Source of the DNA: Penicillus capitatus
Lineage: Eukaryota > Plantae > Chlorophyta
DNA: 64,000 bases
Assembly: GCA_965649825.1 (NCBI GenBank)
Contig: OZ287697.1
Span: forward strand, 1,474,351-1,538,350
Direction of reading: 5' to 3'
Of this stretch, positions 2 to 59,399 are shown one piece after another. The translations under genes were made by a program, and so were the position numbers. The notes below the pieces were generated by a model, which did no database searches, was not told the origin of the DNA, and was given only the letters and a program-made list of their open reading frames with translations. The stretch's first letter is position 1. Every line of letters starts with the position of its first letter.

Positions 2-3000
2 ATTCTCCTGTGGGGATCCACATTCGTGATCGAGAACGCCGTGTTCACCAGTAACACTGCCCTGGGTGGCGATGGCGGCGGGGCCATGTGCGTGAGATCC
101 TCTTCCGAAGTGAAGCTCGACAACGCGATCTTCGCACGCAACAGCTGCCCAGAACAGGGAGGCGCCGTTTTGGTCGAAGCCTCGCGACTGAGCATCAAGC
201 GTTCGGTCTTCAGAGATGGAGAGGCGAAGAAAGCGGGAGGCTTTCTCTCGGCGATCTCGAACAGTGCTGTCGTGGTGGAAGAGAGTCAGATGAGCAGAGG
301 CAGCGCCGAGAAGGGAGGAGCCGTCGCGGTGCTCGATGCGAGCTTCGAGGGACGCCACCTCGAGATCACTAGGTGCACAGCGAAATCGAACGGAGGAGCC
401 TTTGTCTTCGAGTCCGAGAAGGCACCGCAGAACAACACAGCCACATTCGCAGGCTGCACATTCGCCAAAAACAGAGCCGGATTTGGAGGTCGGATTCGCG
501 GCCATTGGGTAACACGTGACCCTGGTGTGATGTAGGAGGACTCTACGCGACAACCGGCGGTCAATCGCCCGCCTGCTCGGATGAGAAGGGCGACTGTTCC
601 GTCGTCACTCTGCGGAGGACGATCTTCGAGAGCAACAACGCCGAGAAAGCGGGCGGCGCCATCTTCGTCAGCCAGTCGAGGAATCTCAAAATCAAGTGTC
701 CCGAAGCGAACGACAGATCGACCCGCTCGCCAGGAAAGGGAAAAAAGGGTTACCTGGACGGACTTGCTTCGCCAAAGGTCGGCTGTGCGCAGTGGACGGG
801 CAACAAGGCTGGATTGTACGGCGAAGTCGTCGCCTCTTATGCATCGCGACCCGTGGTGAGCGTTGAAGAGAATGGAGTCAAGACCGTCGTAACGGACAGA
901 TCCAGTCCCTACCGCATCGAGGGCTACAAGAGTGGTTCGTCGTTGCCCACGATCACGCTACAGGTACAAGACGACTTCCGCCAGAGTCCGGCAATCGGGA
1001 GGGACTTCCGCAACATGATCGCCACCGTGTCCTCTCCAGATACACTCTTCGCCGGAAGGCAAAGTCTTCTGCTGGACAAGCATCAAGTCGAACATCAGGC
1101 CGTCGGATTTGCCAAACCGGGAGTCTACACCATCGACCTTGAATTCGAGGATGACTACGTCGAGAAGGTCAAGATCAAGGTCGAGGTGCAGAAGTGCATG
1201 ATCGACGAAGTGCCTTCTATTAGCGGCACGCTCTGTGAGAAGTGCAGTGCAACGACCTACAGCTTCAACCCGACCGACGACGAGGATCTGGGATGTCAGC
1301 CGTGTCCGGCAAACGGCAACTGCGAATCCCATGTGATCGCACCGAAAGATGGATACTGGCACAGTTCGCCGTGCTCGGTGTACATAAGGAGATGCCTGAC
1401 GTCCTACGCCTGCAACTTCGACGACCGCAAGGCAAAACTACAGGAGAAGACGAAACACATGGAGAGCTGCGATCTGAGTCCGGAGGACATCGAGGAATAC
1501 AAGAAAGCGCAGTGCGCAAAGGCAAGTGTTTTCCCGCCGATCACCGAAAGCCGTCGAAACGGGTCTGTCGCTTCGATTCAGGGTCATTCCGGTCCCCTGT
1601 GCGGATCGTGCGAGTCGGGACACGGGAGCTCGCTGTCTTCGAAATGCCATGAGTGTCCGACTACAGCTGGCAATCTCATGGTGATCGCCAGCTCGACGCT
1701 CATCCTACTCGTCCTGTCAGCCATCACGATCCGCGGGACACTGAGCGCCGTGCGGTGAGACCATCGGGCTCTCCCGGACGGCCTTCTGACGGACTGTGTG
1801 CGTCTTGCAGAGCTTCGGTCAGTCCATTCGCTAAAGTCCCTGAGGAGCCTGACGCTTCCGTCGATGGAGGCCACAGCACAGCGCAGAGTGACAGAAACGA
1901 TGGCGTGCACGCGAGCCCTTCCGTCCTGGCCAAATGGAAAGCCATCGAAATGCTCAAAGTACTGCAAGGTCGACGTCACACTTTTCAAGACGATGGAATG
2001 ATGTGACAGATCACACTCAACTATGTACAGGTGACGATTCTCATCGCCTCGGTGGACGTCGGATGGGCCGTCTCCATGCTCATCATCGCACAGGTGGCAG
2101 GTCCGTGATCGAATTCCACCTCACTGCCCAGATCATGACGTCTCGTGATGTGCAGAGTTCCTCGGCGGTCTTGCAGCGGAAGGCATTCGGCGTTCGGTCG
2201 TGTGTCTGAGCACGGGCAAGCAGTCGATGCATCCAACGGCGCTCGCAGTCTTCGTCACCATCTGCGCCATCCCCACGCTCATCTTCTTTCTGCTCAGTCT
2301 CTTCTGGATCGCCGTCGCGGCATACAACCGCATCCGGAAGCCGATGCGCTTTCTCATGATGCGCTGTCTGCTCTCTGTCATGGTCCTGTGGTACATTGCC
2401 TCGGTCCCCGTCATGAAGACAGCATTCGGCAGCCTGCTCTGCGTGAATGTGCAGGACAGCCAGAACCCTACGGAGGACAGGAGCATCAGCTACTGGGCGG
2501 TGGATACCAGTCTCGAGTGCTTCAAAGGCGACCACCGGACGCTGTCTCTCCTTATCTGGTTCTTCGTCGGGACCATCTACGGTGGCCTCCTCGGCTTCCT
2601 GATCATCGTTCTCTGTTCCTCCGAAGAGCAGCGGACCAACACCGAGAGCTGGATCTATCAGACAACAGGATTTCTCTACCGCAGTTTCAAGAGCAACTAC
2701 CTTCGTTACTGGGAAGTTGTTGTACTCGTGAGGAAGATCGTCATCGCCTTCCTTCTTTTCTGCGCCCAACGTTACGACAGCCAGCTGCCGATCATCGGCG
2801 TCGCTGGCTTTATCGTCATCGCCATGGGACTGCAAATCATCGCGCATCCTTATCGAGACGAATTCAATGTCCTGAATAACTTCGAAGTGATTTCTTTGTT
2901 CGTGTCACTCTTGATGTCGCTCGTCGCCGCCGCCCTGAAGAGTGAGGTATTCAGCGCGGAGTGGGGACGGGTGACCATCACGGCCCTGTGTGGCCTGCTC

Positions 3001-3219
3001 AACATATCGACCTTCGCAGTGTTTTTCACTTTTCTCTTCGGATATTTCGTTGAATACGTTAAGCTGTACTTAACAGATCAGGGGGAGACGCTCGAGTCCA
3101 GTCCATCGACAATGAATCTCGTCAAAACGTGGATGACCCACGAGATCGGGGGTTTCGTTACCTACTTGAAGCATGGCAATTCGGACACACCACATGCAGA
3201 AGCGTCGGAGAACGCATGA
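2..3219 (+). CDS. G1: Pmp-repeat beta-helix / Cys-rich / multi-pass membrane receptor-like protein, 5' end outside window
   Basis: Frame open from nt 2 with GGA/FxxN repeats. Introns 489-535, 1522-1581 (GC-AG), 1755-1810, 1959-2009 and 2101-2155 join the ORF pieces into 983 codons. Contains CEKC..CQPCPANGNC..GYWH, GHSGPLCGSC, GFLYRSF..YWEVVVLVRK. Stop TGA at 3217-3219. Confidence 0.88.
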
Positions 3220-3625: not shown

Positions 3626-5100
3626 GGTAGACGTACGTCGATCGATCACGGAAGGAGTTCTTCCTTCATTGCCGATCCTCAGGATACTTCTCAGACGGAA
3701 TTGGAGGTGAGAGAAGCGCCAGAATCGCACCAGAGTCACGAAACTAGCGAAGGCAGAGAACGACCCATCAGCAAAGCGACCACGGCAGGATGGAATGTTA
3801 CCGAGATGTTCAAGGTACGACAATCGTGCACGTCTTCTTTCCCGACAGCGACGGTTATTGCAGATAACGCTGAACTACATCCAAGTGACAGTACTGATTG
3901 CTTCTTTGAACGTTGGATGGGCCTTTCCTGTTCTCAAAGTGGGAGAGATAACAGGTCCTCAGCTGTCGATGTCAAATCAACCACGCACAACGCCTTATCG
4001 TTGTGTGCTGTGCAGAGTTCTTGGGCGGTCTTGCCACAGAGCGAATCCAGCGCTCTGTTGTCTGTCCGAGCAGAGAAATTCAGTTCCTTCATCCAACTGT
4101 CTGGGCCACAATCACAAGCGTTTCTATCGTTCCTGTTACCGCATTCCTGCTGCCCGTTGCGTTCTGGACAGGAGCATCACGCGATTCTCAAGGCAAATTC
4201 AATCTCCGTCACATCGCGCAGAGATCAATGCTTTCACTCATGGCACTCTGGTACGTCACATCTGTCCCGGCGATCAAGACAACACTCAGCGTCGTCCTCT
4301 TCGTTCATGCATACAGCATACCGGATGGAACACAGAACGATGTTGAAGTCGTCGACGCGACAAAGGAGGAAAAGGTCAACTACTGGGCAGTTGACACGAA
4401 ACTGAAGTGCTTCGAGGGCCAACACTTGACGCTGGTCATCTCGATTCTCCTGTTCGTGTTCGTCATCTATGTCGGACTTCTCATCGTCTTCATCTGCATT
4501 CTCGCGTCAGACAGAGACCTGCCGAATGATCCGGACAGCTGGGTCTATCGGACCAATGGATTCCTGTACCGCAGCTACAAATCTGGATGGCGGCGCTACT
4601 GGGAGGTTGCCATCGTGCTGAGGAAGGCGATCATTGCTTTTCCGGTGTTCTGTGCCCACCGCTTTGACAGTCTAGCGTTCATCATATACCTCGCCATCTT
4701 TATCATACTTGCGATGGCAGTGCAGTTTGCGATCAAGCCCTACAGAGAGAAGTTTCTCAACAGAATAGATGCCTCTGCCCTTTTCGTCTCACTCCTGACG
4801 ATTATGTTAGCCATCGCGCTGGAGAGTGGAGGGTTCACCAGAGAGTGGCTTGGACTGACACTCTCAATCATCTGTGTCGTGCTCACCATCGCCACCTTTC
4901 TCGTTCTTCTCTGTTTTCTGCTCGGGTATTGTGCTGAGTACATTAAGCTCTCACCGAGCGAATGCGGAAGGCACATCGATGCAGATGCCGGAACACTGAC
5001 GCCCATGACGATCTGGCTGGGCTGTAAACTTCAGTCGTTGGCTTGCTATCTGGGATTTGGCCAATCTCGCGACCAAACGACTATCGCTTCCAATGTGTGA
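3626..5100 (+). pseudogene. G2: 5'-truncated paralog of G5 retaining only the cytoplasmic loop and an open membrane domain (possible 394-aa protein from ATG 3806)
   Basis: Collinear with 31860-33225. Introns 3815-3863 and 3955-4015 are at family positions. No stop in the spliced frame from 3626 to TGA 5098-5100. No ectodomain exons upstream. Confidence 0.75.
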
Positions 5101-7481
5101 ATGTTCTTTGGCCAACAGCATCACGCATTTCGTTTATATACAACAACAGAAAGAATATATAGAGTTGTCATTGATTGCAACATCCCACTTGTTTGCGTTT
5201 TCTCTCTAGCGTGCAACATGCATGCGTGTTTAATTGAACGAACAATCTGTGGCAGTGTGGGCAGAAACATAACATTGCTGAGCATCGAGCGTGGGTAGTT
5301 AGTGCTCCCTCCTTGAGTCTGTACTGCACAAGAACAATCATTCAATCAACTGTAAATGTAATTTGTAAAGGAGATTGCTTGATGTGACTGTGAACGGACT
5401 CGAGAGAATGTTGAAGGAGAAGAGGGACTTTTCGACTGAAAGTTCTCCGACGTCTAACTCCGATTCCTCCGCACGTCACCTCACATTCTATGCTTCTCTG
5501 TGCCGACACTCGTATGACGACCAAAGACAGGAGAGACATCTTCAGACAACAGTGCACCGTCATTCTTCCATGAATGGTTTCCATCGTCGCGTTGACGCCA
5601 CTCAGTATCTCTCCCGAAGCAGCACCCTGACAGCGGCATACATGACTGGAAGGCAAACACAGATGCCGATGGTGGAGATGCGAGCAATCGATCTTGCCGT
5701 GATCAGCTAACTGATTCCTTGGCTGAGGTGACTAAAGTGCGTCTTCCATACTCCTGCTGAAGCATGGTGTGCTGTGTCTAAAGGACGAGAGATCTGGATA
5801 TTGCGATACTACCACAGGCATGATGCGGATCGTCGTCGAGAACGTCCTCGATGCAATTAAGGACGATCGACGCGTCATTGTCCGCCGCAATTGTGAAGGC
5901 GATGCGTATCGTTCGACGTTCGCTGGACTATTCGGCCTACGACTCGAGCGTCCAACCCTATTTTCACCATCTAACGGTGTGGCTTTGAGTAGAGTGTTTC
6001 ACCGCGAGAACTCGCAGTGTGACGATGCAGTCGACTAACCTTCGCTTTGGAGGATCGAGCTTCCCGTTTGTCAAGGATTCTTAGTCTTGACTGAAAAATG
6101 GAATCCTGAGAAGAAGAATTCTGATAACGACTGTCGGAAATCTAGTTTTCTATTGTCCTGGATTGGAGGATTCGAGTCTTCTCGCCTGTCGCGGATTCGC
6201 TGTTCGCAACGAGAAGCTGTTTTCTAAATCTGTCGTCGGCCTCTGTTACGAAGCAACGTCCACACAAAACAAGATGAAACGTGATCTGCACAATGGATCT
6301 GTTTCTGTTCTGTGTTATAGCGGAAGGCTAAGGAGTGCCAACCGAGCGACAGAAGTAGATGTGTTTAGTCCTATCGTTTAGTTTGGACAAGAATTCCTCA
6401 CTTAATGGATTGGTGTCCTCGTTCGCTCTCTGCACCTTTCCCTGGAATCGAATTTCCTGATTGGCTTCGACGTTGTTCTCTTTAGTGGCGTTTTCTTTCT
6501 TACGGATATAATGTGTCCGTTGACCGAATTCGATTCGGTTCACTGTCACTCTCCATTCCTACAGGGTTTGTTGTCTGCTCGCTATTATTCACACGACATC
6601 AGTCTTGTGAAGAGAAGATGTCATTCTGAGAAAATGTCTGGTGCGATTTCTGGTGGTCATGATGCTCGGACGTCTCCGTCAAAGACAGATACTTGAATTG
6701 ACGGTTCAATCAGTACGGTAACAGAAAAGTCTCAAGGGTTTCCGTAGACATGGTCATTCGATTCAGCAGAACTGAAGCTGCCGTTCGCTGTTGTCGATCT
6801 CGACATCTCTATGGCAGGAAAAAAGTGGGTTTTCAACTGCGCGTGTACGTTGAGAAGAATTCAAGGGTCGATTCCGAGACCGGAAAGCGTAAATGGTGTG
6901 AGAACATCGCCGTCTGCTCAACATCGTTAACGACTTCGTTTCATGATATGTTACATCGTGAAATGACAGTCGGCAGACAGACCGAAGATGCTCATAAAGT
7001 GTAGCAAGTGACAGAAGGGGCAGGTACCAACGAAAGGGGCCTTGTAGGATGCCGTATCCGGTTTCACTCTATTTGCACCTAACCGGTCGGTTAACGAACT
7101 TCGTATTGGTGACGGCCTATGTGCCGCCGCCGAACACGGACGGCGGCATGAAGTCTGCAAGATCCGTCGCGTCATCAAACCGTCACGTCTATGGCCTGCA
7201 CGTTTCGCGTTTCATTGTGACCGTCGTCGTATCGAGAGACTCAGAGTGAAGTTATTCAGCAAACAACCGTATGGAACGAAGATCCAGTGAATTCGTTAAC
7301 TGCCGCTGCTATTAGAAACATCGCATGTTGTGCGATTCTGATTCGTTCTGCTCTTTGTCACTCTATTGTGTCCGCATCGGTCGTCTGTTAACGCAGCATC
7401 GCACACAAGCCAACGGAACCGCGGTTGTTTTTCGCGAGGTCACTACTAAGAGACTTTCTTATCCGTCGGGGCTACGGACGG

Positions 7482-10400
7482 ATGCGGCGCTCGTTTATTC
7501 TACTCGTGTGCTGCGCTTCATGCAGCTTCTCTGTCTTGTCCACTGCTGGCGCAAAGCCATTCGCACATGACCAGCAGTCTCCCCACTCTATTCATAAAAG
7601 TAGATGCTGTTCCAGCACGCTGATATGCGAGCAAATGTTCGCCGGCAGGTGCGCGGACAAATCTCCGCCGCCGTTCGCTGCCAACCGTAAACAAGGATGT
7701 CTTCGCGGAGACCCCTGTCAAAGCATTACTGGTAAGCCTGTATAGCCAGTAGCGACTCGTCGGCACCGTACTCTTGCGCCAAGGTCCGCAACGGAGAACG
7801 ACTTCTGCTTCAATCCGAAGGACTCGACGTTGCCAGGGAAGCAGGTCAGACATTTCTCTCTCGATTGTCTTTCCAGAAGATTCACTGAGTGGCGTGTTTA
7901 GAACGTGAATGTTCTCTGCGACGCGTCGACATCCGCCGTTTCTTGGACGAGAGCTCGCGAACGTGGCTGGTAGACGACGATGCGATTGATGAAATCGACA
8001 GCGACTTGCAGTCGCTTGTCGACTGCACGAAGGAAGGAGACGTTCTGCTGTTCAACTCGACGAAAAGAATCCGACCCTCCGCTCGCGTAGTCCTCCCATG
8101 GCCGCTGACCCTGAGTGCATTCGTGGAGCATACCGCGCCCGAGGAGGGCGTGGTCCCGAAGGCAGTTAAGAGAGCGACGTTCACGTGTCCCGCCGACAAC
8201 GAAGGCGTCTTCCTCGTCCGGTAGGTCCTGTCGATGCAAAGAACACCGTTGACGGTGTGTGCCTTGCAGAACCGCAGGATCCACTCTCGCTAACCTCGCG
8301 TTCGAGGGATGCTCTTTCGGCGAATCGGAAGAGAAGAAAGCGTTGATCGAAGTAGAGGGGTGTGCCTCGGCGCCAGCAAACCGTACTCTGCTTCTTCACC
8401 ACGTGTCCTTCAGAGAGAACCGACTCGCCGATGCGGCAGGCGTCTGGGTCCACTCGACATCGTGTCTGGCAATCGACATGCGAAACGTCGAGTTCTCAGA
8501 CAATCGGTGCTCGAGCAGCGGCAGCGGCGCCATCCTCTCGTCGGACAACAGAATCGAAGACTTCACGGCCAGGAGGAATCGTCTGACAGAAGAACATGAT
8601 CGTCAGCCGTCCGTTCTGAATGCTCCAGCTGGATCGAAGACCGTGGCGAACGGCGTCAGAGCTACTCACAACGACCTCTCTGCGATGCATGTCGTGGAAG
8701 GATCGCTCTCCCTGACGAATTCGACCTGTTCGCATAACTCAGTGGAGGCGTTTGACGACGAAGAGCCCTTCGGTCCTTGCATCCATCTCGTCCGAACGAC
8801 GGCTACGATCCAGAACTCTCGTTTCGAGGGAAATCAAGGATACTGGGGAGGGTCTGTTTCCATTCAGTCCTCCAACGTCTCCATTGAAGACTCGGACTTC
8901 AGAAACGGCAGAGCCGAGAAGGGAGGTGTTCTCTTCGCCGAGACTGGCAGCGCGGTCTCCATCGAGAGATGCAGCTTCGTGGAGAACGAGGCAAGCAAAC
9001 ACGGTGGTGTGGCCTTCATCGTTTCGTCGTCAGTGTCACTCATCGATTCAAATATGAGTGGCAACTCGGCTGCGGATGTCGGCGGAAGTCTTCGCCTCAC
9101 AGACTCGACGTTGCAGATCGAAGCATGTTATTTTGAGAATGGAAGCGCATCTGAAGGAGGGTTTGTTCGCATGCAGAAAGCATCAGCGAATATCACCGAC
9201 TCAACATTTGTCGAAGGCTTTGCAGAATACGGAGGGTGTATTGCTTTAGATGAGCGAAGCCAGCTGGTGTCTCGTGACCTCATCTTCAGATCCAGTTCCG
9301 CGAGCCACAGTGGAGGAGCTGTTCATGCTTTTCAAAATAGCTCTCTGTCCTTCATCAATGCGACCTTCGTATCGAATACAGCAAGGACCAATGGTCATTG
9401 CATTGCCGTTGATTCGTCTCGCGTTTCAGCAAAGCAATCTCTCGTGGCCAACAACACGGGGGCTGCAAACGGAGCCTTCCTTACTGCCACAAATCGTAGC
9501 AGTGTGGAAATCGTCGATTCCGCTTTCCTCGGCAACGCAGCTAATTACGGTGGCGTGTTCTCTTTGCGAGCCGGGTGTTCAGCGGAAGTACATGGAAGTC
9601 TCTTTTCGGGGAACTCCGCATCTCAAGGCGGCGGAAGCTTTTACATTGGCGAGCATAGCAAGATGTCCATCCATCTATGCCGATTCGATAACGGAACTGC
9701 TGGTAATACTAGCGGAGGATTTATTACATCATTTACCAGCGAAGTCAGAGTTTCGAGTTCTCACTTTACCAATGGTTTTGCCGATGTTGGTGGTTGCCTC
9801 GCGCTTTCTGATGGAGCCAACATGACCGTAGAAAACAGCACCGTTGCCTTTTGCAGAGGAAAGAGTGATGGAGGAGCAGTTAATGTTCTTAACTCGACGA
9901 TAGCCTTAAAGAACACCATATTGGCGAATAGCACAAGTGATATTGGAGCTGGCGGAATCGACTGTGTGCTAATGAGCCTAATAAGCGCATCAAATTCGTC
10001 CTTCGAAGGGAACTCTGGTGTCTTTGGAGGTGCAATGTCTGTTGTGGTCGAGAGCCTGGCCACAGTCGCTGGGTGTCGTTTTTCGGGAAACATAGCTCGA
10101 CACAGTGGAGCAGCAGTCTATGTTGGTTCCTCAAGCGCCAGTCTTAGTCATTGCGTTTTCACAAACGGGAGTGCTGTGTATGGAAGCGCTTTTTCCATCA
10201 TCAAAGGTGCGCGGGTGAATCTTAGTGATTCTTCCATCTCTTATGGGATGAGTGACTCTTTGGGTGGCGCAATCAGTATTAGCACCAAAAGTGTTCTGCG
10301 GATGCGCAATGCCTCTGTGGAGAACAACACATCGCTGGATAGCGGAGGCGCTATCTCTGCTGCAGATTCTGCAATGCATTTTCAAAACTCAAGCTTCCTC

Positions 10401-13400: not shown

Positions 13401-13859
13401 GTGATCGTCGTTTTCTCTTATCCTCTGGGTGCCAATCTGCAGCAAGTTCTCGCTGTACTCCTCTTCGTATTTGTTCTCTACCTTCAGACCTTGTGTTGTC
13501 CTTACCGTCCTGAGTTCGACAGCTTGAACAAGATGGAGAGTCTGTCTATTCTTGTCTCTGCCATGACGTTTGGTTCGAGCATATTCTTTGGGGACGAGCA
13601 CGTGTCCTCCACCGCTCGTATCGTCATCACTGTCGGTATCGCATTCTTCAACGTTGCTCTCTTTCTTTTCTTTTTTGTTGTCTTTGTCATCTATGCAGCC
13701 AACTACCTGAGAACTGTTCTTGATGAAGAGGGAGTGCCTTGCAAGCCTGATGGCGGTGCTCATCACATCCTGTGGGTCTATTTTTACCATTACCTGATTG
13801 AACGAATAAAGAAGGCTATTCATAAACTTTTCTTCGGCGCACGGCCGGCGTCTGTCTAA
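7482..13859 (+). CDS. G3: Pmp-repeat beta-helix multi-pass receptor-like protein, 1,992 aa
   Basis: Signal-peptide-like start MRRSFILLVCCASCSFSVLSTAGA. GT-AG introns 7600-7648, 7732-7783, 7845-7901, 8221-8269, 11155-11202, 12195-12243, 12634-12675 and 12767-12819 give 1,993 codons. All are conserved in G6. Confidence 0.88.
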
Positions 13860-13957
13860 TAATCGGGCGTCTGCGCTCTGTCATTTTCCTTTCTGCTATA
13901 ACCTACCTAGTTGTTAAGCACTTCCTATTTAATTTGAACCTATCTGTCACAACTGCT

Positions 13958-14384: not shown

Positions 14385-15182
14385 ATCAACATCTTCAACT
14401 GCGTCGTAGTCCATGATTCGACAACAGTTGGAATCGACACGACAACAAATCAGTGGGCAGTGGACACGAGTGTTGAGTGCTACAAGGGATCACGTGCCAC
14501 GCTGGCTTATCTGTTGGCGTGGCCATTCTTCGTCTCTATACCTGTGGATTTCCTCTAGCTCTTGCATTCCTGGTTGTCAAGAAGGTTATAGAAGACTACA
14601 AGGATGGATGGATGGATCTACGAAGTCAACGGCTTCGTGTACCGATCCTACAGCAAAAGATACATCTTCTGGGAGTCCGTGATCAGGTTCAGGAAAGCCC
14701 TTCTCGCCGTCGTGGTCGTCTTCTCCTACGAACTGGGATTCAACGTTCAAGCTGTTCTGGCCTCTTTCGTCCTGATCATGGCCCTTTACCTTCAAATGAA
14801 TTGTCGTCCTTACCGTAAAGAGTTCGATCATCTCAATGACGTTGAGAGTCTCTCCATCTTGATTTCTTCTTTCACGTTCATTTGCAGCATCTTCTTTGGC
14901 GTCGGTTACGTCTCAGATGAGATTCGTGTTCTCATCAGTGTTCTCTTGTGTTTGACAAACATTCTTTTCTTTCTTTACCTCTTCACTCTTTCTGCCAGGT
15001 TTGCTGCTGAGTACCTCAAGACTGTACTGGCTGGAGAAAGAATTCGTATCTCGTCGACGGATGACACATTTCGGATTCTCGCTACCTATTTGATTGATTA
15101 CCTGTACGTTAATCCAGAGAATTTCGCGAAGCGATGGGGTAGATCTGCCAGATCGAATCGCTATCGTCGTCCTGAAGTCTGA
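14385..15182 (+). pseudogene. 5'-truncated, frameshifted relic of the G7 membrane domain
   Basis: Aligns to ~50895-51689. 1-nt deletion near 14530 followed by an in-frame TAG, and a 4-nt GATG slippage duplication near 14605-14612. No upstream exons. Confidence 0.88.
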
Positions 15183-24555: not shown

Positions 24556-25038
24556 GTATGCGCTGCCGAACAGCCGATTACGCGTTCGTCGTCGAATGTC
24601 GTTGTTAGCCTTATCTCTGTTACCGCTTCATCGTTTTTATGCTCTTTTTGCGTCAAGGCTATCCCGATTAGCCTCTGATCTGTGATGGGACGGGTTTGGC
24701 GGTGAACCGCACGTAAATTATGAATCGTCATGGAACGTTATGGTCTGTATTCGATGTATCTTTTGGATAACATTTGCCAAATGGGTTCGTTTAACGCATC
24801 GATCTATTGGACGACGTATTGTCGATGACGACTCGGGTTCCGTGCAGAGACAACCATCCCTGTGACGATTCGACGCTGATGCATAGAGCCAGCTCGTAAA
24901 CGACAGCCAAGGCCTCCTGCGAGGTTTACAGATTTCAGAGTTTTCGACATGGATGAACCAAAGCGACCGAGAGGGCGCTTCACGACACGAATCGACCGTC
25001 GCCTTTCGTCGGTCGACGACCGTTTCGTTCCCTATCAG

Positions 25039-41500: not shown

Positions 41501-41861
41501 TCCTTATCGTCCCGAGTTCGATAGCTTGAATAAGATGGAGAGTGCATCGATCTTCGTTTCGGCAATGACCTTTGCCTCGAGCATGTTCTTCGCAGACGAG
41601 AAAGTATCTTCCTCTGTCCGCACGTTGATCACTGTCGGTATTATACTGGCGAACGTGACACTTTTGTTGTTCTTCCTTTTCTTTTTGGTGATCTTTGCCG
41701 TCAACTACCTGAAAATTCGTCTTGATGAAGAGGGAGTGCCTTACAACCCAGATGGCGGTGCTCACCACATCCTGTGGGTCTATTTTTACCATTACCTGTT
41801 TGAACGCATGAAGAAGGCTATTCACAAACTGTTCTTCGGCGCACCGCCGGCATCTGTCTAA
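35547..41861 (+). CDS. G6: Pmp-repeat beta-helix multi-pass receptor-like protein, 1,967 aa (close paralog of G3)
   Basis: Introns 35665-35713, 35797-35848, 35910-35966, 36289-36337, 39226-39276, 40269-40317, 40627-40675 and 40767-40821 give 1,968 codons with no internal stop seen. Confidence 0.88.
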
Positions 41862-51200: not shown

Positions 51201-51689
51201 TTCAGAAAAGCCATTCTTGCAGTTGTCGTCGTTTTCTCTTATGAACTCGGATTCGACATTCAAGCAGTTCTGGCCTCTTTCGTCCTGATCATGGCATTGT
51301 ACTTTCAGACCAAATGCCGTCCCTATCGTGAAGAGTTTGATTCTCTCAATGACGTAGAGAGTCTCTCCATCTTGGTCTCTTCCTCTACGTTCATTTGCAG
51401 CATCTTCTTTGGGGTTGATCACGTCTCTGATGAGGTTCGTGTGCTCATCAGCGTTCTCTTGTGCTTTGCAAACATTCTTTTCTTTCTCTACCTCCTCACT
51501 CTTTCTGCCAGGTTTGCTGCCGAGTACCTCAAGACTGTACTGGCTAGAGAAGGAATCTCGTCGACAGATGACACGTTTCGAATTCTCGCAACCTATTTGA
51601 TTGATTACCTGTTTATGCATGTTAAGAACGTTCTGATGAGATGGGGCAAATCTGCCAGATCTCGTCGCTATCGTCGTTCTGAGCTTTGA
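45216..51689 (+). CDS. G7: Pmp-repeat beta-helix multi-pass receptor-like protein, 2,048 aa (ectodomain close to G5)
   Basis: Signal peptide MRRRLLGLLLTCVMFRTTASA. Introns 45598-45657, 45977-46029, 48957-49012, 50002-50051, 50442-50494 and 50586-50640 give 2,049 codons. About 150 bp upstream of the ATG is shared with G5. Confidence 0.88.
46976..48690 (+). repeat. Intragenic tandem cassettes in G7: periods 234, 234, 390, 390, 234 nt
   Basis: Anchors (Asn codon of FxxN) at 46976, 47210, 47444, 47834, 48224 and 48458. Confidence 0.9.
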
Positions 51690-53149: not shown

Positions 53150-56100
53150 CTAGTGACTTGCACCCCTAGTGGGATTGACAGTGACCGAGGTTCTGCGGCG
53201 GCCACTGCCACGGCGGCGACACAGAGAAAGAAAACCCTGCTTGAACAGGACAAAGATGTGATCGGTTACGTAGACTCTGATAATGTGATGCGGTCCTGAA
53301 CGGGGATCGACTGGCACACCCTCGTTGATCAATGTCATCCTCAAGTACGTGGCACCAAAGCTGACGAAACAGCAGAGAAAGCAGAACAGCAGCGCGCCGT
53401 TGGACACGACAACACCCAGTGTCACCAGGACTCGAACGACCGAGGAGACTCTGTCTTCGCTGAAGAAGATGCTCGAGACAAAGGTCAGCGAGGACACGAG
53501 AATAGAGGCTCCCTCCATTTCGTTCAGGACGTCAAAATCGTGACGGTACGGACGGCAGACTATCTGCACGTACAGGGCCAGAATCAGGACGAACACTGCG
53601 AGAAGGTGCTGCAGATCGGCGCCCAGCGGGTAAGAGAAAACGACAACGACGGCCAGGATGGCCTTACGCAGCAGGATGATCGATTCCCAGAAGATGTACT
53701 TCTTCTCGTACGATCGGTAAAGGAAACCAGCAACGTCGTAGACCCATCCCTCCTTGTAGTCTTCCTTGACGTTGCAAACGGTGAGGTGACCAATGACGGC
53801 GGGAAAGCCGAATGTGAAGACGGCCAAGAACGGCCATCCCAGGACACCTGCCAGGACTGCGTGGGATCCCTCGTAGCACTTGATCGCGGTGTCGACCGAC
53901 CAGTAATCCGTTGTGTGGTCGACGCCGACGGAGACTGAGTCGTGGACTCTGATGCAGCTGAGGATCTTGACGAGAGACTTGCTCAGCGAGATGTAGCTGA
54001 TGTAGAAGATGACGAGGGCGCTCAGGGTAACCTTCTTCAGCAGATAGATCCACGTCTTCTGGTAGCAGGTCTTGATCATGAACCAGAAGACGGCGTAGAC
54101 GAGGATAGCGGCCAGGGGCTGGAAGATGTCGACCAGAGTGCTTCCGATGGATCGTTCGATCGAGGCAGTCGCTGGAATGATGCAGTCCACGGAACGATTG
54201 ACGGCTTCGGACGTGATGCCGCTGACGAACTCTGCAGAGAGGACAAGGCAGTGATCGACAGTTTGATGTCACGGTGATCCCTTACCGGCGGCTTCGAACA
54301 TGGCGATGATGGCGAGGGTCCACTCGACGTTGACAGCAATGGCGATTGCCGTCACCTGGAGAAAGTTCACGGTGATCTGCACACAACAGCCAAGATTGTC
54401 ACTCGTTCAGTGTGAGATGGATGTGCAGATATGACCTTGAACATCTCGACTGCTTTCCATTTTGCGAGTTCCGCTTCTTCAAGGCTCTGATCGGGATCGC
54501 TTCCTTGTTCCTGATCGCTTCCCTGACCGTATCGAGAGCTCAGAAATTTGCTAGGCACGTGCCCAGTGACCATCATCTCTACCATCTGTTCGTTGACCGG
54601 AACCGGACGCTCACTCGCAGAAGCGACGGGTGGCCGAGAAGAGGATCCCTGCTGCGACGAAGGCGAAGGCGATGGCGATGCGGCAGCGGCAGGAGTCTTT
54701 CGATTGCTTCGGACTGTGAAGCTTGACAGTCCCATCAGAACGAGAAAGGAGGCAAAGATCAGAGCGTAGTTGCCGAATCCCGAGAAGCACTTCTCGCAGA
54801 GGAAGGAGTGCGTCCTTCCGTAAGACTCCTTGCACGAACCGCAGAGAGGTCCATCGTGTCCCTGCGATACAAGTGTCTTAGAGGCTGAGATGACATCCAG
54901 ACGCACCTCTCTGCACTGCGCCTCTGCGTAGTTCTCGAGCGATTCCTCGTCGAAGTCGCAGCTCTGTACGTCTCTGGTCGCCTCAATCATACTCTGCTGC
55001 CTGTCTTCTGAGTCGCAGCCGTCAGATGCGAGACACCTCTGGATGTGTCCGGAGCACGGTGTCTTGTGCCAGTATCCCTTCTTCGGCAGAATCACTCGGG
55101 TCTCGCAGTTCCCGTTCTCGGGACACGGGTGGCAGGCCAGGTCGTCGTCCGGATGGAAGCTGAAAGTCGATGTCGTGCAGGGCTCGCAGAAGGTGCCGTT
55201 TCCCGATGGCACCTCGCCCATGTCGCAGCTCTTCACTTCGACGGTGATCTTCAGACTCTCGATCTGCTCTTGGTCGAATTCGACGACGACCTTGTAGGTG
55301 TCAGGCGTCGCAAACCCGGTGGTGGTGAGATGCACAAGATCCTGGTTCAGGAGCACCCCCGTGCTTCCGTCGAACAATCCATCTGGCGAAGACATCAGGG
55401 CCAGAACCTCTCTGTTGTCCATTCCGACTGCTGGACCTTGGCCGAAGCTGTCAAGGGCTCTCAGTGCAATCGCGGGAAGCGGCGAGCCGCTCTTGTAGTT
55501 GCTTATGATGTAGGCGTCTTCGTTTACCGACACCACGTCTTCCTCCTCCTCGCTGAGTATGTGCGACTGGACGCTGGACAGAAAGGATGCAACCTCTGGG
55601 CCGTATCTGGCAGCTGCGTTGCCCGACAGAGCTGGACAGATGTCCTCTGCGAATTCGAGGCCCATCAGCGACTCCATTTTCTTCCTTGAATAGAATTCCG
55701 GTGCATCACTGGACGTCTGGGCCCGACACTGGACTCGCACGATCGCCGCCCTGTCGACGACGACTCCTCCGCCAGCCGCTTCTGCTTCGTTCCCCGAGAT
55801 GGAAGAGTTGACGACGGCGACGACGCCGCAGATGTCTCCTTGTCTCTGCGAGTAGTTCTGGTGCGCCGCTTGCACCTCTCTGGCAACATGCAGTCCACCT
55901 GCGCGATAGGATGATCACTTCTCCTGTCTTGACGTCCATGAGAGTACCTCCGTACACTGCCGAGTTGTTCACCACAGTGCTCTCCTCCAACTGGAGGGCG
56001 AGGGATTGGGGATCGGTGTACTCGAGGAAGATCGCTCCTCCGCGTGTTGCTCTGTTGTCATGCAGTGTGCAGTTGGCGCACAGAATGCGCGAGGCGGATC

Positions 56101-59100
56101 TTCCCGCGATGGCACCACCGTCCTTCTCCGCTGTGCAGCGAGACACAGTCAGATTCTTCGCTCTGACATCGGACTCTGACAACGCAATGGCGCCTCCATC
56201 GACATCGGCACTGCCGTTGAACATCGACGTCGACTCCATGAACATCTCGCTCCTCTCCCCGGCACTGACAAAGCCGCCGCTTTCGGAGGCCTTTCCGTCG
56301 GCGATCTCCAGGTCGCTGAGGCTCAGCGTCGACTCGGAGAGGAAGAAGCTGCCACCCCGCTCGGCTGTACCATCTGTCAAGCTGCTGGATGTGATTCTCA
56401 GAGATGAAGCCTTCATGTGGCAATGTCCTCCGGATTCTTCGGCACGGTTGCCAGCAAATGTGACATTCGCCAGATTCCCGGTGGCATTCCTTCGCAGATC
56501 GAGAGCTCCGCCCAACCGGGCAGTGTTGTTGCTGATGCGCGCATCCGTGATGTTGACAGTGCCTGGCTCTGCGCAGAACAGTCCGCCTCCGTTGCTGGCA
56601 GCATTGTTTCCTGCGAGAAGCAGTTGGCTGGCAGCGAGAGTGCTCCGAGACAAGTGGATACCGCCTCCCTCCTCATCTGCATGACTGGCTGTGATGCTGA
56701 CATTTGTCATCACAGCAGATGCATGCTCCGCCAGGCGCAGTGCACCACCGTCCTTTGAGGCCCGACAGTCTTGGATGGTCGTATTCCGTATCGTGAGATT
56801 ACCATTGCCAACGTCCATGCACCCACCCAATCGAGCAGTGCCGTTCTCTAGTGATGAATCACTGATAAACAGAAGACTGTTTGCCCAAGCGTATATGAAG
56901 CCACCAGCCTCGCATTGGCTGTTCTTGAAAGTACATCGGCTCAGGTTGAGTGTGGAACGCTCGGTATGCAGTGAGCCACCGTTGTGCCTTCCCTGATTGT
57001 CGATGAAAGTAACGTTTACTAGAGCATCGTTGCTCCTGAAACCTTCCGCTATGGCGCCACCATCTCTGGCAGAATTGTTCTTGAAAAGAGAGTTGGTGAC
57101 GGTCAGGTTTGTTGAAGCGGTGGCAGAGAGGCCTCCGCCTTCTCGAATAGCAGTGTTGCTTTCGAAAACCAGCTCATCTCCAGACATCATTGATCCAAAT
57201 TCGTAGACGCCCCCTCCATACACTGCTCGATTTTCTACAAAGCGTGTACGAGTGATGACAGCTGCTGCAAATGGGGTCACATGGATGCCGCCTCCAACAT
57301 ACCCGGCGTGGCACCCTTGTAAGGTTGCATTGTGAACAGTGACTGTTGCCATATCACAGTTCACGCAAGCGCCTGACCTTGCAGTGCCATTTCTGAACAC
57401 AGAATGTCTGATGTCGACGTGTGATCCCTCTTTGATCTCCAGACATCCGCCACTCACTTCTGCCCTTCCGTCGATGAGGACGCACCGCCTGATGGTGGCA
57501 TTCGATTCGGAGACATGCACGGATCCTCCCTCTGAAGATGCAGAATTCTTGGTGAAGTTCACGTCGACGAAGCCGCCAACAGAACTTGACGAAAGCCTGA
57601 CGGCACCACCCCTCTCAGCCGTGTTGTTGCGGAAGAGCGTGTCGCTGATGCACAGTTCTGACTCCACGGCGTGCACGGCGCTCCCACTGTTGTCTGCCAG
57701 ATTCAGTCCATCGCCGACGATGTGCGACTCCGTGACGTAGAGTCCCGCTCCTTGTTCTGCCGATCCTTTGTCGATGCGGCATCTTCGGATGTCGAGTCTG
57801 GATTCCTTGGCGTGAACTGTGCCGCCAGACGTCGCTGCGTTGTTCTGGTCGAACTCGCAGTCGGAGAGGTTGGCCGAGAGGGCCAGATCCAGATAGAGAA
57901 CGCCGCCGACGTCAGCTGCGTTCTTGCTGAAAGTGCTATCTGCGATGGCGACGTCAGACTCGGAGGCGGCCAGCACTCCGCCAGAACTGTTGGCGCTGTT
58001 TGCGACGAATCGGCATGACTGGATGACAGCAGAGCTGGATGCTCGAAGACTCAAGGCGCCACCCTCTCTTGCCTCGTTCCGTCTAAATGTGTCGTTCGCC
58101 AAAGTCACATTCGAGCCTGTTGCTAAGATGGTGGATCCAGTCGTGCAAGCATTCTCTTCGAAACGAGTGTCCCGGACGGATGCAGATGCATTCGACAGTC
58201 GAATGCAGGGAGTGGCAGCGTCCGCCTCGGATACGTTGACTGTGTTCTGGACAAAGGAAGCGTTGGACAGATCCAACGACCCACTCTCGACGTGAAGGAT
58301 GGGACACGCGTTCCCCGTTGCGTCCATGCGCTCGATGGATGTCTCTGACCCGTCTGGCCCGCGGAACACGACTGTGCTGGCGTTGGCAGAGTCCGACAGA
58401 CGGTTCTGCCGAACTCGGATGTTCTCCAGCCGGTTCCGACGGGACAGCGTCACACCACAGTGACCGCCACACTCGTTGTCGGAGAATTCGAAGTCCATCA
58501 GCTCCAGTCCGGAGCAGGAAGGACTCTCAATGGCGAGAGCAGCAGCATCGATCACGGTGTTCCGCTCGAAGCTGACGTGCTGAAGCTGGATGACGCCTTG
58601 CGTTCTGTCGGACTGGCACTGCTCCACCTCGACGATACCTCGAGACCCAGAAGAACCTCTCAGAGAGCAGTTCTCGAATCTGAGATTGGCAAACAGAACA
58701 CTTCTGGATCTACACAGAAACAGAGTGTAAAGCTGCCTTCTCGCCAAGGCTGGTAGGCTCACTTGACAAGGAAGACGCCTTCTCCGTCGCCGGGGCATGT
58801 GATGGGCGCCTTCCGTGGGGCTCTCGGATAGAGACCCTCCACACTCCGAGTTCTGCCCGTCGTTGCGCTGATCGTCACGTTCCACGGAATGATGACTGTA
58901 GCCGCGGGCTGGATGTCTACAGTGACGTCGAAGACGAGCGTATCTCCTTCTGCCGTACAGTTGACGATGACCTGCAGGTCGTTGTCAATCGCCTCAAGGA
59001 CATCGCCGTCGATGCGCCAAGTACGCGCCGCTGCGTCGAGATACCGACGCACCTCGCTTCTGCTCAAGACGCACGGATAGTCTGAGCAAATTCACATACC

Positions 59101-59399
59101 AAGTCCTCAGTCCATCGTGGCGCAACCGCTGTCTCGTAGTGCTCACCCGAATCTGAACTGTCAGCGTCGTCCTGCAGCAGGCGTTTCCCGAGACTCTGTT
59201 TTCCGATAGCGAATTCGCCGTCCGTCGGCCGAGACGCCGCCATGCGCGAAGAATCGTCGAACCCTTCAATGCCGTTTCCGACCCTCTCCGACACGGGTCG
59301 GCTACGGTCCGAACGTATGGTCGTTTCAGCTGTGGCGCATAGCGAGGGAAGAATTGGCAGGAGGCAGAAAACGGAGAGGAATCGCAGGAGAGTGGCCAT
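53150..59399 (-). CDS. G8: Pmp-repeat beta-helix multi-pass receptor-like protein, 1,974 aa, convergent with G7
   Basis: Signal peptide MATLLRFLSVFCLLPILPSLCATA. Introns 59082-59146, 58710-58762, 55899-55947, 54862-54906, 54377-54435 and 54232-54285 give 1,975 codons. Family motifs are intact. Confidence 0.88.

What the first reader, a model, noticed from the sequence alone, without database searches (positions are those of the whole stretch)
2..59399. Tandem array of giant Pmp-type beta-helix / multi-pass membrane receptors: candidate diversified recognition system
Seen: 7 genes and 3 relics of one ~2,000-aa architecture occupy most of 60 kb. They share intron positions, cap domain, Cys-rich module and TM motifs, while the beta-helix surfaces diverge strongly. 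Established: GGA(I/L/V)+FxxN repeats define chlamydial polymorphic membrane protein adhesins and form right-handed beta-helices. I recall that similar Pmp-plus-TM architectures exist as uncharacterised protist/algal proteins, so the architecture itself may not be new. Inference: duplication, cassette shuffling, patchy homogenisation and pseudogenisation together resemble immune or allorecognition receptor clusters. This may be a non-LRR variable receptor repertoire.
Basis: partly seen in the sequence, partly recalled or inferred. Interest (0 to 1): 0.85.

Follow-up and report, generated by a model that had tools for sequence, protein, structure and literature searches.

The report
Giant beta-helix, TRP-like membrane protein array
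A siphonous green alga carries a tandem cluster of about 2,000-residue surface proteins that join a long, fast-evolving Pmp-type beta-helix to a conserved nine-helix membrane domain related to fungal Flc/Pkd2 "TRP-like" calcium channels, so they look like an uncharacterised family of cell-surface sensors, but an immune-like role is not shown.

Summary
Window 2-59399 carries seven copies of one ~2,000-aa, intron-containing gene plus three gene remnants, about 75% of the span. Five copies are complete and intact. G1 is cut by the window edge. G4 has one premature TAG. All copies share five intron positions, an N-terminal cap, a ~26-residue Pmp-type rung, a Cys-rich stalk and a multi-pass membrane domain.

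New here: the closest named relatives are hypothetical proteins of Caulerpa, Bryopsis and Ostreobium, so the source is probably a bryopsidalean alga. The membrane part has nine predicted helices. It is a divergent relative of Pfam PF06011 ("TRP", fungal Flc/Pkd2 type), shown through relatives and not by the window proteins directly. It has no solved-structure relative.

The array evolved by block duplication, deletion, a domain swap and patchy gene conversion. The central beta-helix diverges about 40-fold faster in protein sequence than the membrane domain. However, dN/dS stays below 1 everywhere tested (0.4-0.6 in the helix, 0.1-0.2 in the membrane domain).

Best reading: surface sensor-channels for wall, wound or contact signals. 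The immune or allorecognition reading is possible but unsupported. This is a new variant of known kinds, present but unstudied in published algal genomes.

The parts
2..3219 (+). G1: 3' half of a family gene, cut by the window start. It holds the last beta-helix rungs, middle domain, Cys-rich stalk and 9-TM domain of the 'type B' subtype. There are 5 introns, and intron c is GC-AG.
3767..5100 (+). Relic A: 3' third of a G4-like gene (end of exon 5, the TM2 exon, and the TM3-9 exon). The ORF is still open, but no beta-helix lies upstream.
7482..13859 (+). G2: complete gene, 8 exons, 2006 aa. It is the paralog of G5 within a 28-kb block duplication.
14385..15179 (+). Relic B: G6-like fragment of the membrane domain (aa 1807-2068), 75% aa identity.
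18188..24555 (+). G3: complete gene, 1972 aa, and the most divergent copy. The first exon and its 202-nt intron are the least certain part of the model.
25035..26358 (+). Relic C: heavily deleted remnant with cap, beta-helix and membrane-domain pieces.
27105..33225 (+). G4: full-length copy, 1952 codons. Its ectodomain is G6-like and its membrane domain is G1/relic-A-like. Intron c is GC-AG. It is interrupted by one TAG.
32560..32562 (+). Premature TAG in the G4 membrane domain, where relic A has TCG.
32434..32511 (+). Perfect in-frame 39-nt tandem duplication in the extracellular hairpin loop of G4.
28824..30155 (+). Intragenic tandem duplications of beta-helix cassettes in G4: 387 nt (5 rungs) x2.3 and 234 nt (3 rungs) x2.4.
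35547..41861 (+). G5: complete gene, 8 exons, 1981 aa.
45216..51689 (+). G6: complete gene, 6 exons, 2068 aa. It has a 234-nt x2.4 rung cassette duplication at 46976-47529.
53150..59399 (-). G7: complete gene, 7 exons, 1974 aa, convergent with G6. Exons are: signal peptide and linker 59399-59147; cap 59081-58763; beta-helix 58709-55948; middle domain and Cys-rich stalk 55898-54907; CxC motif, TM1 and cytosolic linker 54861-54436; TM2 54376-54286; TM3-TM9 and tail 54231-53150.
3774..13957 (+). Copy 1 of the block duplication (relic A plus G2). It is homologous to 31860-41960 (G4 3' part plus G5) at 74-85% nt.
16834..17277 (-). Faint beta-helix-like fragment: 32% aa identity to G4, E = 2e-5.

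Best explanation
What it is (well supported): a tandem array of a gene family of siphonous green algae (Bryopsidales), evolving by gene birth and death.

Each gene encodes, in order:
- a signal peptide;
- a variable linker;
- a ~100-aa cap;
- a beta-helix of 24-32 recognisable rungs, of Pmp type and rich in N-glycosylation sequons;
- a ~220-aa middle domain;
- a ~110-aa Cys-rich stalk;
- a GxxGPLCGSC motif;
- a nine-helix membrane domain with the N-terminus outside and the C-terminus inside.

The membrane domain is a divergent relative of Pfam PF06011 ('TRP'). That family holds the fungal Flc proteins and fission-yeast Pkd2.

How it most likely works (inferred): the proteins are cell-surface sensor-channels.
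- The long rigid helix reaches into the cell wall or beyond and binds wall or foreign glycans, or carries mechanical load.
- The disulfide-rich stalk couples it to the conserved membrane domain.
- The membrane domain converts binding or force into an ion signal, probably Ca2+, as reconstituted Pkd2 does when the membrane is stretched.
- Paralogs differ mainly in the helix, so the array would supply sensors with different ligand or load specificities. This would suit wall-integrity, wound or contact signalling in a giant single cell.

The array itself grows and decays by block duplication, rung-cassette duplication, exchange between paralogs and deletion.
For: Architecture and intactness:
- Five ORFs of 1972-2068 codons are spliced at shared GT-AG sites.
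- A second copy of G7 keeps the ORF, all introns and only in-frame indels.

Extracellular ectodomain:
- The N-termini are hydrophobic, as in signal peptides.
- Each complete gene has 20-43 NxS/T sequons and 45-53 Cys in the ectodomain.
- Conserved Cys residues lie in loops predicted to be outside.

Nine helices:
- AlphaFold2 model of the C-terminal region, pTM 0.71, with pLDDT 80-94 in the core.
- Hydropathy peaks agree.

Link to PF06011:
- 18 of 63 family members match the family at E<=1, best 7.3e-13.
- Bryopsis GMH41758.1 has the same full architecture, scores 32.8 bits against a 28.5-bit cut-off, and matches the window's membrane profile at 1.4e-70.
- UniProt names an Ostreobium homolog 'TRP C-terminal domain-containing protein'.

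Function of PF06011 proteins, from the literature:
[quoted passage not shown] It passes Ca2+ when the membrane is stretched (PMC9727806).
- Flc1 combines an extracellular ML-like domain with the TRP domain and controls Ca2+ homeostasis (PMC9600462).

Selection:
- Strong constraint on the membrane domain (dN/dS 0.10-0.22) and Cys-rich stalk (0.08-0.27).
- Weaker constraint on the helix (0.40-0.46).
Against: - The window's own proteins do not match PF06011 even at E<=10. The link rests on relatives.
- Only the last ~170 positions of the 426-position profile are matched.
- Neither predicted model resembles any solved structure, including canonical TRP or polycystin channels. The best Foldseek results were E = 0.36 and 0.022, with TM-scores below 0.25.
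- A profile search of PDB sequences found nothing.
- Channel activity in PF06011 has been shown directly only for Pkd2.
- Flc proteins act mainly in the ER, so a cell-surface location is not assured.
- No expression, localisation or ligand data exist for this family.
- Literature searches found no paper on this family.
Confidence: 0.45

Rival explanations
1. The array is a variable, non-LRR recognition repertoire for microbes, or for self versus non-self at wounding, fusion or mating. The beta-helix surface is kept diverse by selection, as in immune or allorecognition receptor clusters.
For: - The array is tandem, with relics, a block duplication, rung-cassette duplications and a domain swap.
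- Synonymous divergence is mosaic, which suggests gene conversion.
- Against its counterpart on another contig, G7 differs by 15-19% nt in the central helix but only 2-3% in the membrane domain (dN 0.25 against 0.006).
- A second contig pair is 96.9% identical overall but has a 13-15% divergent patch inside a helix ORF.
- The family has dozens of members on many contigs.
Against: - dN/dS is below 1 in every domain and window tested: 0.40-0.46 over the helix, 0.54-0.61 at the variable rung positions, and 0.90 at most in a single window.
- Raised dN comes together with raised dS. That fits exchange between paralogs or relaxed constraint as well as it fits balancing selection.
- The two contigs may not be alleles, because their relative order and orientation differ.
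- There are no expression or challenge data.
Confidence: 0.2
2. The proteins are static adhesins or wall-anchoring structural proteins. The beta-helix ties the plasma membrane to the wall or substratum. The multi-pass domain is only an anchor and does no signalling.
For: - Pmp-type helices are adhesins in Chlamydia (PMC11166332, PMC10715098).
- Pmp-like surface proteins mediate adherence in Trichomonas (bioRxiv 10.1101/454884).
- UniProt labels one Ostreobium homolog 'Adhesin-like protein'.
- There is purifying selection across the helix.
Against: - A simple anchor does not need nine helices.
- The membrane domain is the most constrained part of the protein: 0 of 395 and 5 of 343 residues changed between near-identical copies, with dN/dS about 0.1.
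- It carries invariant polar motifs such as YW..DT..C..G.H, GFLYRSY, WE...LRK and LN..E.
- Relatives of this domain belong to a family with channel and Ca2+-homeostasis roles.
Confidence: 0.2
3. The proteins are membrane-anchored enzymes that modify carbohydrates. The beta-helix would be a catalytic pectate-lyase or epimerase-like domain acting on wall polysaccharides in the Golgi or at the surface. The Flc-like domain would serve transport or targeting.
For: - Pfam Beta_helix (PF13229) and NosD (PF05048) match several copies and homologs.
- Right-handed beta-helices include many polysaccharide lyases, hydrolases and epimerases (established knowledge).
- Flc proteins are largely endomembrane proteins (established knowledge, not checked in the papers read here).
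Against: - No match to any specific lyase, hydrolase or epimerase family appeared.
- The rung motif is the non-catalytic Pmp type.
- The helix lacks conserved polar positions across paralogs (28-32% identity), which is unexpected for a shared active site.
Confidence: 0.1
4. The array is decaying and no longer functional.
For: - There are three relics.
- G4 has a premature stop.
- G2 and G5 have degenerate Pmp motifs that fall below the Pfam cut-off.
Against: - Five ORFs of about 6 kb are uninterrupted and have conserved splice sites.
- dN/dS is well below 1 in all structured domains.
- The counterpart of G7 has only in-frame exon indels.
Confidence: 0.03

Closest known systems
Uncharacterised Bryopsidales proteins: Caulerpa lentillifera g3968.t1 (1958 aa), g3776.t1 and g3773.t1; Bryopsis sp. 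KO-2023 GMH41758.1 and GMH45542.1; Ostreobium quekettii A0A8S1ISC7, A0A8S1IWH3 and A0A8S1IW64
   Same: - The domain order is the same from signal peptide to tail.
- The motifs match, including EGVF-type cap end, GYTGPLCGSC, KWKAVEIFK|ITINYLQV, YW..DT..C..G.H and GFLYRSY.
- The membrane domain matches at E = 1e-131 to 1e-55.
- Near-adjacent Caulerpa gene numbers suggest arrays there too.
   Different: - Identity to the window genes is only 24-52% by domain, so these are not the same species or not orthologs.
- They are annotated only as hypothetical, 'adhesin-like', 'right handed beta helix' or 'TRP C-terminal domain' proteins.
- No study of them was found.
Fungal PF06011 'TRP' proteins: S. pombe Pkd2, S. 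cerevisiae and Cryptococcus Flc1-3, Aspergillus TrpR
   Same: - They also have a signal peptide, an extracellular N-terminal domain, about nine helices and a cytosolic tail.
- Relatives of the window proteins match the Pfam model above its cut-off.
- Pkd2 is a stretch-activated, Ca2+-permeable protein of the plasma membrane (PMC9727806).
   Different: - The fungal ectodomain is a small ML-like lipid-binding domain (PF14558; PMC9600462). Here it is a ~1,400-1,560-aa beta-helix, middle domain and Cys-rich stalk.
- The window proteins themselves fall below detection by the Pfam model.
- Only the C-terminal part of the model is matched.
Chlamydial polymorphic membrane proteins (Pmp; Pfam PF02415 repeats)
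   Same: - The rung motif FxxN...GGA(I/L/V) builds a right-handed beta-helix.
- Both are multigene families with divergent helices (PMC11166332, PMC10715098).
   Different: - Pmps are bacterial type V autotransporters with a C-terminal beta-barrel.
- These are spliced eukaryotic genes with an alpha-helical nine-pass domain, a cap, a middle domain and a Cys-rich stalk.
Apicomplexan and ciliate CRMPs (cysteine repeat modular proteins)
   Same: - CRMPs have a large modular ectodomain with EGF, ephrin-receptor-like or furin-like Cys repeats. Some have parallel beta-helix repeats.
- That ectodomain sits directly ahead of nine transmembrane helices.
- CRMPs are proposed contact sensors that trigger exocytosis (PMC9815656, PMC9670195).
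   Different: - Homology of the membrane cores was not tested here.
- CRMPs are few per genome, act as a heterodimer, and are not in tandem arrays.
- The Cys-rich stalk here matches Ephrin_rec_like only weakly (E about 0.07-0.08).
Trichomonas vaginalis Pmp-like and BspA-like surface protein families
   Same: They are eukaryotic expansions of bacterial-type surface repeats, and they are implicated in adherence (bioRxiv 10.1101/454884).
   Different: From my own knowledge, not checked in the paper here, the Trichomonas proteins are anchored by a single helix. There is no Flc/Pkd2-like domain.
Clustered variable receptor loci (plant NLR and RLP clusters, invertebrate allorecognition loci)
   Same: - They show tandem gene birth and death with relics.
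- They show exchange between paralogs.
- The ligand-facing part evolves much faster than the signalling part.
   Different: - The fold is different.
- No dN/dS above 1 was found here.
- No genetic or functional link to recognition exists.

Membership tests
Chlamydial Pmp autotransporters | Repeated GGA(I/L/V) and FxxN motifs (Pfam PF02415 above its 20.6-bit cut-off) | tested here: met
   Scores are G1 22.6, G3 44.9, G4 78.0, G6 62.1 and G7 64.9 bits. G5 scores 14.9 bits and G2 has no match. The rung consensus from all copies is F..N.A..GGA[IVL] with a 25-27 aa period.
Chlamydial Pmp autotransporters | C-terminal autotransporter beta-barrel and bacterial outer-membrane context | tested here: not met
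   The C-terminus is nine predicted alpha-helices. No autotransporter family appeared in the Pfam scans. The genes have spliceosomal introns.
Pfam PF06011 'TRP' (Flc/Pkd2 type) | Match to the family model above its 28.5-bit cut-off | tested here: inconclusive
   - The window proteins show no match even at E<=10.
- Among relatives, 18 of 63 match at E<=1, best 7.3e-13.
- Bryopsis GMH41758.1 scores 32.8 bits.
- The close relative P0073 scores 17 bits, E = 0.0028.
- Membership therefore follows only by transitivity, through HMMER matches of 1e-55 or better.
Pfam PF06011 'TRP' (Flc/Pkd2 type) | Signal peptide, extracellular N-terminal domain, about nine helices, cytosolic C-terminus | tested here: met
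   Supported by the AlphaFold2 model, hydropathy, and sequons and Cys residues in the ectodomain. This is prediction only.
Pfam PF06011 'TRP' (Flc/Pkd2 type) | N-terminal ML-like domain (PF14558) usual in fungal members | tested here: not met
   There is no such match. The ectodomain is a beta-helix, a middle domain and a Cys-rich stalk.
Pfam PF06011 'TRP' (Flc/Pkd2 type) | Ca2+ permeability or a role in Ca2+ homeostasis | not testable with these tools
   This needs reconstitution or imaging.
Canonical TRP/polycystin channels (six-helix, tetrameric pore fold) | Structural similarity to solved TRP or PKD2 channels | tested here: not met
   Foldseek of both models against the PDB gave best E = 0.36 and 0.022 with TM-scores of 0.25 or less, and no TRP channel was listed among the top 50 matches of either search. 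A profile search of PDB sequences gave 0 hits.
CRMP-type sensors | Cys-rich EGF or ephrin-receptor-like modules directly ahead of nine helices | tested here: inconclusive
   Nine helices are predicted. The Cys-rich stalk matches Ephrin_rec_like only at E = 0.07-0.08. No CRMP sequence was available to compare the membrane cores.
Immune-type or allorecognition variable receptor cluster | Tandem array with birth-and-death evolution and exchange between paralogs | tested here: met
Immune-type or allorecognition variable receptor cluster | Positive or diversifying selection on the ligand-facing surface | tested here: not met
   Pairwise Nei-Gojobori dN/dS is 0.40-0.46 over the helix, 0.54-0.61 at variable rung positions, and 0.90 at most in one window. 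These are crude pairwise tests. Site models were not run.
Immune-type or allorecognition variable receptor cluster | High polymorphism between individuals or haplotypes | tested here: inconclusive
   Two contig pairs show local helix divergence of 13-19% against 0.2-3% in membrane domains. Whether the contigs are alleles is uncertain.
Immune-type or allorecognition variable receptor cluster | Expression or function tied to recognition | not testable with these tools
   No transcript or phenotype data are available.

The most novel reading that the evidence does not exclude
Siphonous green algae use clustered, recombining beta-solenoid ectodomains fused directly to an Flc/Pkd2-type ion-conducting domain as a repertoire of recognition channels. 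Each paralog or allele would be gated by a different wall fragment, microbial surface or self/non-self cue. This would be a receptor-is-the-channel surveillance system without LRR, Ig or kinase domains, triggering the Ca2+-dependent wound and plug response of a giant single cell.
Probability: 0.12. Interest if true: 0.85.

Novelty: new variant of a known kind. Interest (0 to 1): 0.55.

Why it matters
Bryopsidalean algae are single giant cells. They must detect wall breaches, grazers and microbes within seconds, and the surface sensors that do this are unknown.

This family is large, clustered and conserved in at least three sequenced genera. It joins a possible glycan-binding or load-bearing rod to a domain whose fungal relatives handle stretch-activated Ca2+ entry. 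That makes it a concrete and testable candidate for wall-integrity or wound sensing.

It also extends the PF06011 family to green algae with a completely different ectodomain. It provides a second lineage, besides CRMPs, in which a giant modular ectodomain sits on nine helices.

The array is also a clean example of block duplication, cassette duplication, domain swapping and decay within 60 kb.

Tried and rejected
- Ab initio splice prediction with a home-made dynamic programme over-called or under-called introns depending on the penalty. I replaced it with motif-anchored junction searches checked across paralogs.
- Word-indexed protein searches returned only unnamed metagenome ORFs and never reached named proteins. 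The exhaustive HMMER search followed by cluster look-ups gave the taxonomy.
- Direct Pfam scans of the window's membrane domains, both single ORFs and spliced, gave nothing.
- Foldseek on two AlphaFold2 models and a PDB sequence search found no structural relative. I therefore rejected the GPCR, canonical TRP, TMEM16 and transporter folds.
- The weak JAMP, DUF7630 and TNFR_ELAPOR1 matches on the GPLCGSC motif are below all thresholds and were not used.
- ORFs in the intergenic stretches and at 59.4-64 kb matched no Pfam family.
- No tRNA genes were found.
- Literature searches for Pmp repeats in algae, or for this family in the Caulerpa, Bryopsis, Ostreobium or Halimeda genome papers, found nothing.
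- I rejected an assembly artefact because the copies differ by 15-70%.
- The species was not identified beyond 'closest to Bryopsidales'.


Full report
**Source and nature of the DNA.** The window is eukaryotic nuclear DNA with about 52% G+C. It has short canonical introns of 42-65 nt. It is the reverse strand of positions 276,534-340,533 of a 576,620-bp contig, ctg340394_13x, from the ENA metagenome assembly ERZ25074695. An exhaustive HMMER search with a profile of the membrane domain found 9,994 cluster representatives at E<=1e-3, 3,542 at E<=1e-10 and 299 at E<=1e-30. Of the 20 best full-length hits I looked up, 18 carried a name. All 18 come from the siphonous green algae Caulerpa lentillifera, Bryopsis sp. 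KO-2023 and Ostreobium quekettii. A plant-type DCD-domain gene lies nearby on the same contig. The source is therefore most likely a bryopsidalean alga. The species was not identified.

**Check of the observation.** Mapping seven domain queries by tblastn gave seven ordered copies and three fragments. I built spliced models by anchoring each junction on conserved peptide motifs and listing GT/GC-AG introns that keep the frame.
- G2, G3, G5, G6 and G7 are complete and uninterrupted, at 2006, 1972, 1981, 2068 and 1974 codons.
- G1 is cut by the window start.
- G4 is full length but carries a TAG at 32560-32562, where relic A has TCG. It also has a perfect 39-nt tandem duplication at 32434-32511.
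- Five introns lie at homologous positions in all copies. They follow the cap, split a GG|A(I/L/V) motif in the last rungs, follow AQCxx, follow KWKAxExFK, and follow the 91-nt TM2 exon.
- Intron c has a GC donor in G1 and G4 only.
- G2 and G5 have two extra 5' introns, G7 one and G3 one. The G3 intron is 202 nt and is the least certain junction. G1 has one extra intron in exon 5.
- Relic A (3767-5100) is the 3' third of a G4-like gene. Relic B (14385-15179) is a G6-like membrane-domain fragment. Relic C (25035-26358) is a mosaic of cap, helix and membrane pieces.

Genes and relics fill about 75% of 2-59399. The splice models are inferred. They gain support from a second copy of G7 on contig ctg340204_12x, which is 88.7% identical over 11.6 kb. 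There the ORF is intact, all six introns keep GT-AG, and every exon indel is a multiple of three.

**Architecture.** Each protein starts with a hydrophobic, signal-peptide-like N-terminus and a variable linker. Next come a ~100-aa cap ending in EGVFLV(K/R), and a beta-helix of 24-32 recognisable rungs spaced 25-27 aa apart. The rung consensus is S-S-...-(D/N)-x-(S/C)-F-F-x-N-N-A-A-x-x-G-G-A-(I/V/L), which is the Pmp FxxN/GGA(I/L/V) repeat. Pfam Chlam_PMP passes its cut-off in five copies, and Beta_helix or NosD match three. G2 and G5 are degenerate and fall below the cut-off.

After the helix come a ~220-aa middle domain and a ~110-aa Cys-rich stalk. The stalk matches Ephrin_rec_like only weakly. 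Then follows an invariant G(H/Y)xGPLCGSC motif and the membrane region. The ectodomain of each complete gene holds 20-43 N-glycosylation sequons and 45-53 Cys.

An AlphaFold2 model of the whole C-terminal region of G7 has pTM 0.71 and pLDDT 80-94 in the core. Together with hydropathy it gives nine transmembrane helices:
- TM1;
- a low-complexity cytosolic linker;
- TM2, with an exon to itself;
- an extracellular helix;
- TM3-4;
- a conserved extracellular beta-hairpin carrying YW..DT...C..G.H;
- TM5;
- a cytosolic GFLYRSY helix;
- TM6-9;
- a cytosolic tail helix.

Caulerpa g3968.t1 and Bryopsis GMH41758.1 show the same order and motifs.

**What the membrane domain is.** The window's own sequences match no Pfam family, even at E<=10. 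Across the family, however, 18 of 63 members match PF06011 ('TRP') at E<=1, the best at 7.3e-13. The full-length Bryopsis homolog scores 32.8 bits against a 28.5-bit cut-off over profile positions 228-396. A relative 39% identical to G2 scores E = 0.0028. UniProt names an Ostreobium homolog 'TRP C-terminal domain-containing protein'. These proteins match the window profile at E = 1e-55 or better. I therefore regard the domain as a divergent branch of PF06011, with about 0.8 confidence.

PF06011 is the family of fungal Flc proteins and fission-yeast Pkd2. Flc1 combines an extracellular ML-like domain with this domain and controls Ca2+ homeostasis (PMC9600462). [quoted passage not shown] When reconstituted, it lets Ca2+ through if the membrane is stretched (PMC9727806).

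The name 'TRP' should not be over-read. Neither of my models resembles any solved structure, canonical TRP or polycystin channels included. A profile search of PDB sequences was also empty.

**How the array evolved.**
- Self-comparison shows a block duplication: 3774-13957 (relic A plus G2) matches 31860-41960 (the 3' part of G4 plus G5) at 74-85% nt. In addition, 14384-15614 (relic B) matches the 3' end of G6 at 77%. The unit 'G4-like, G5-like, G6-like' was therefore copied and then partly deleted.
- The same G2-like then G6-like order recurs at about 80% identity some 100 kb away on the contig. More members lie at 79-100 kb.
- G4 and G6 share their ectodomains (57-72% identity, dS 0.5-0.8), but their membrane domains are only 32% identical with saturated dS. 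G4's membrane domain groups with G1 and relic A. This indicates a domain swap.
- Rung cassettes of 234 nt (3 rungs) and 387 nt (5 rungs) are tandemly duplicated inside G4 and G6.
- Along G2/G5, dS varies from 0.06 to 0.94 in 100-codon windows. This is the signature of patchy conversion.

**Selection.**
- For distant paralogs, identity is 28-32% in the helix repeats, 33-39% in the middle domain, 42-49% in the cap, 54-58% in the Cys-rich stalk and 56-59% in the membrane domain.
- G2/G5: dN/dS is 0.46 in the helix repeats, 0.27 in the Cys-rich stalk, 0.22 in the membrane domain and about 1 in the signal and linker region.
- G4/G6: dN/dS is 0.40 in the helix repeats.
- G7 against its counterpart: 0.44 in the helix, 0.08 in the Cys-rich stalk and 0.10 in the membrane domain. 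The highest windows, 0.77-0.90, lie in the central helix. There dN reaches 0.25, against 0.006 in the membrane domain.
- Splitting rung positions by how conserved they are across rungs gives 0.54-0.61 at variable positions and 0.25-0.45 at conserved ones.
- A second pair of contigs is 96.9% identical but has a 13-15% divergent patch inside a helix ORF (dN/dS 0.41). A neighbouring membrane-domain ORF has no amino-acid change in 395 residues.

The helix is thus a hot spot of change in which dS and dN rise together. Nothing exceeds neutrality. This fits relaxed constraint plus exchange between paralogs. It neither proves nor fully excludes diversifying or balancing selection, which would need true alleles and site models.

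**Interpretation.** The identity of the array is secure. For function I favour a surface sensor-channel, with about 0.45 confidence. A rigid, glycosylated rod is coupled through a disulfide-rich stalk to the most conserved part of the protein. That part is a nine-helix domain whose fungal relatives mediate stretch-activated Ca2+ entry and Ca2+ homeostasis. Apicomplexan CRMPs offer an independent parallel. They also place a large Cys-rich ectodomain, sometimes with beta-helix repeats, on nine helices, and they are proposed contact sensors (PMC9815656, PMC9670195). Homology to CRMPs was not tested.

Rival readings are:
- static adhesins or wall anchors (0.2);
- membrane-anchored carbohydrate-active enzymes (0.1);
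- a dead array (0.03).

**Novelty.** Proteins of this family sit in three published algal genomes as hypothetical or auto-named entries. I found no paper that describes them. The parts are known kinds: the Pmp-type helix and the PF06011 membrane domain. Their fusion, the family's expansion in Bryopsidales and its array dynamics are not described. I rate it a new variant of a known kind, of moderate interest.

Noticed in passing
window 1522-1581 and 31465-31519: Intron c has a GC donor (GCAAGT, GCGAGT) in G1 and G4 only. These are the two copies that share the 'type B' membrane domain. The GC-AG intron looks inherited within that subfamily.
   Followed up: partly
L007 5545-17118 (contig ctg340204_12x) against window 60256-48703: A second syntenic copy of G7 and the 3' half of G6 is 88.7% identical. 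Further along, G6's helix is only 70-78% identical. Its order and orientation relative to the L005/L006 pair differ between the two contigs, so they are not simple colinear haplotypes. They may be rearranged haplotypes or old duplicates.
   Followed up: partly
L005 against L006, about 14-16 kb in L006 coordinates: Two contigs (12x and 13x) are 96.9% identical over 21 kb but have a 13-15% divergent patch confined to a beta-helix ORF. 135 of 743 residues differ there.
   Followed up: partly
L004 (record 424,811-445,836 of the window's contig) and L006 (78,841-100,028): Further arrays of the same family lie about 100 kb and 200 kb from the window on the same contig. L004 repeats the G2-like then G6-like order at about 80% nt.
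   Followed up: partly
L001 (contig ctg340592_344x, 6.9 Mb, same sample): A family member (P0046, 41% identical) lies on a contig with 26-fold higher coverage, next to ORFs with A2M/bMG10 and phosphatidylserine decarboxylase domains. The sample seems to hold a second, more abundant organism that also has this family.
   Followed up: no
window 20844-21893 (-), 53664-54272 (-), 55045-55689 (+) and similar: Long ORFs lie antisense or out of frame inside the beta-helix and membrane-domain exons. They overlap the real frames and are most likely by-products of the repetitive, biased codon content, not genes.
   Followed up: no
window 63520-63978: A short minus-strand ORF reads ...FLPGQDNAVADALSRY.... 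From memory this resembles a conserved motif of Ty3/gypsy-type retroelement polyproteins, but Pfam gave no match. A clear RVT_1/RNase H/integrase element flanks family genes in L002.
   Followed up: partly
window 59400-63500: About 4 kb downstream of the array has no long ORF, no Pfam match and no family fragment. The array ends at the G7 start codon (59399).
   Followed up: partly
Caulerpa lentillifera gene models g3773, g3776, g3785 (P0090, P0069, P0086): The gene numbers of three homologs are nearly adjacent, which suggests that the family is tandemly arrayed in Caulerpa as well.
   Followed up: no
window 12390-12633 against 40470-40626: The cytosolic linker between TM1 and TM2 is low-complexity. 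Its length ranges from about 10 aa in G3 to about 80 aa in G7. G5 lacks a 27-aa stretch that G2 has. dN/dS there is close to 1 in G7 against its counterpart (0.92).
   Followed up: no
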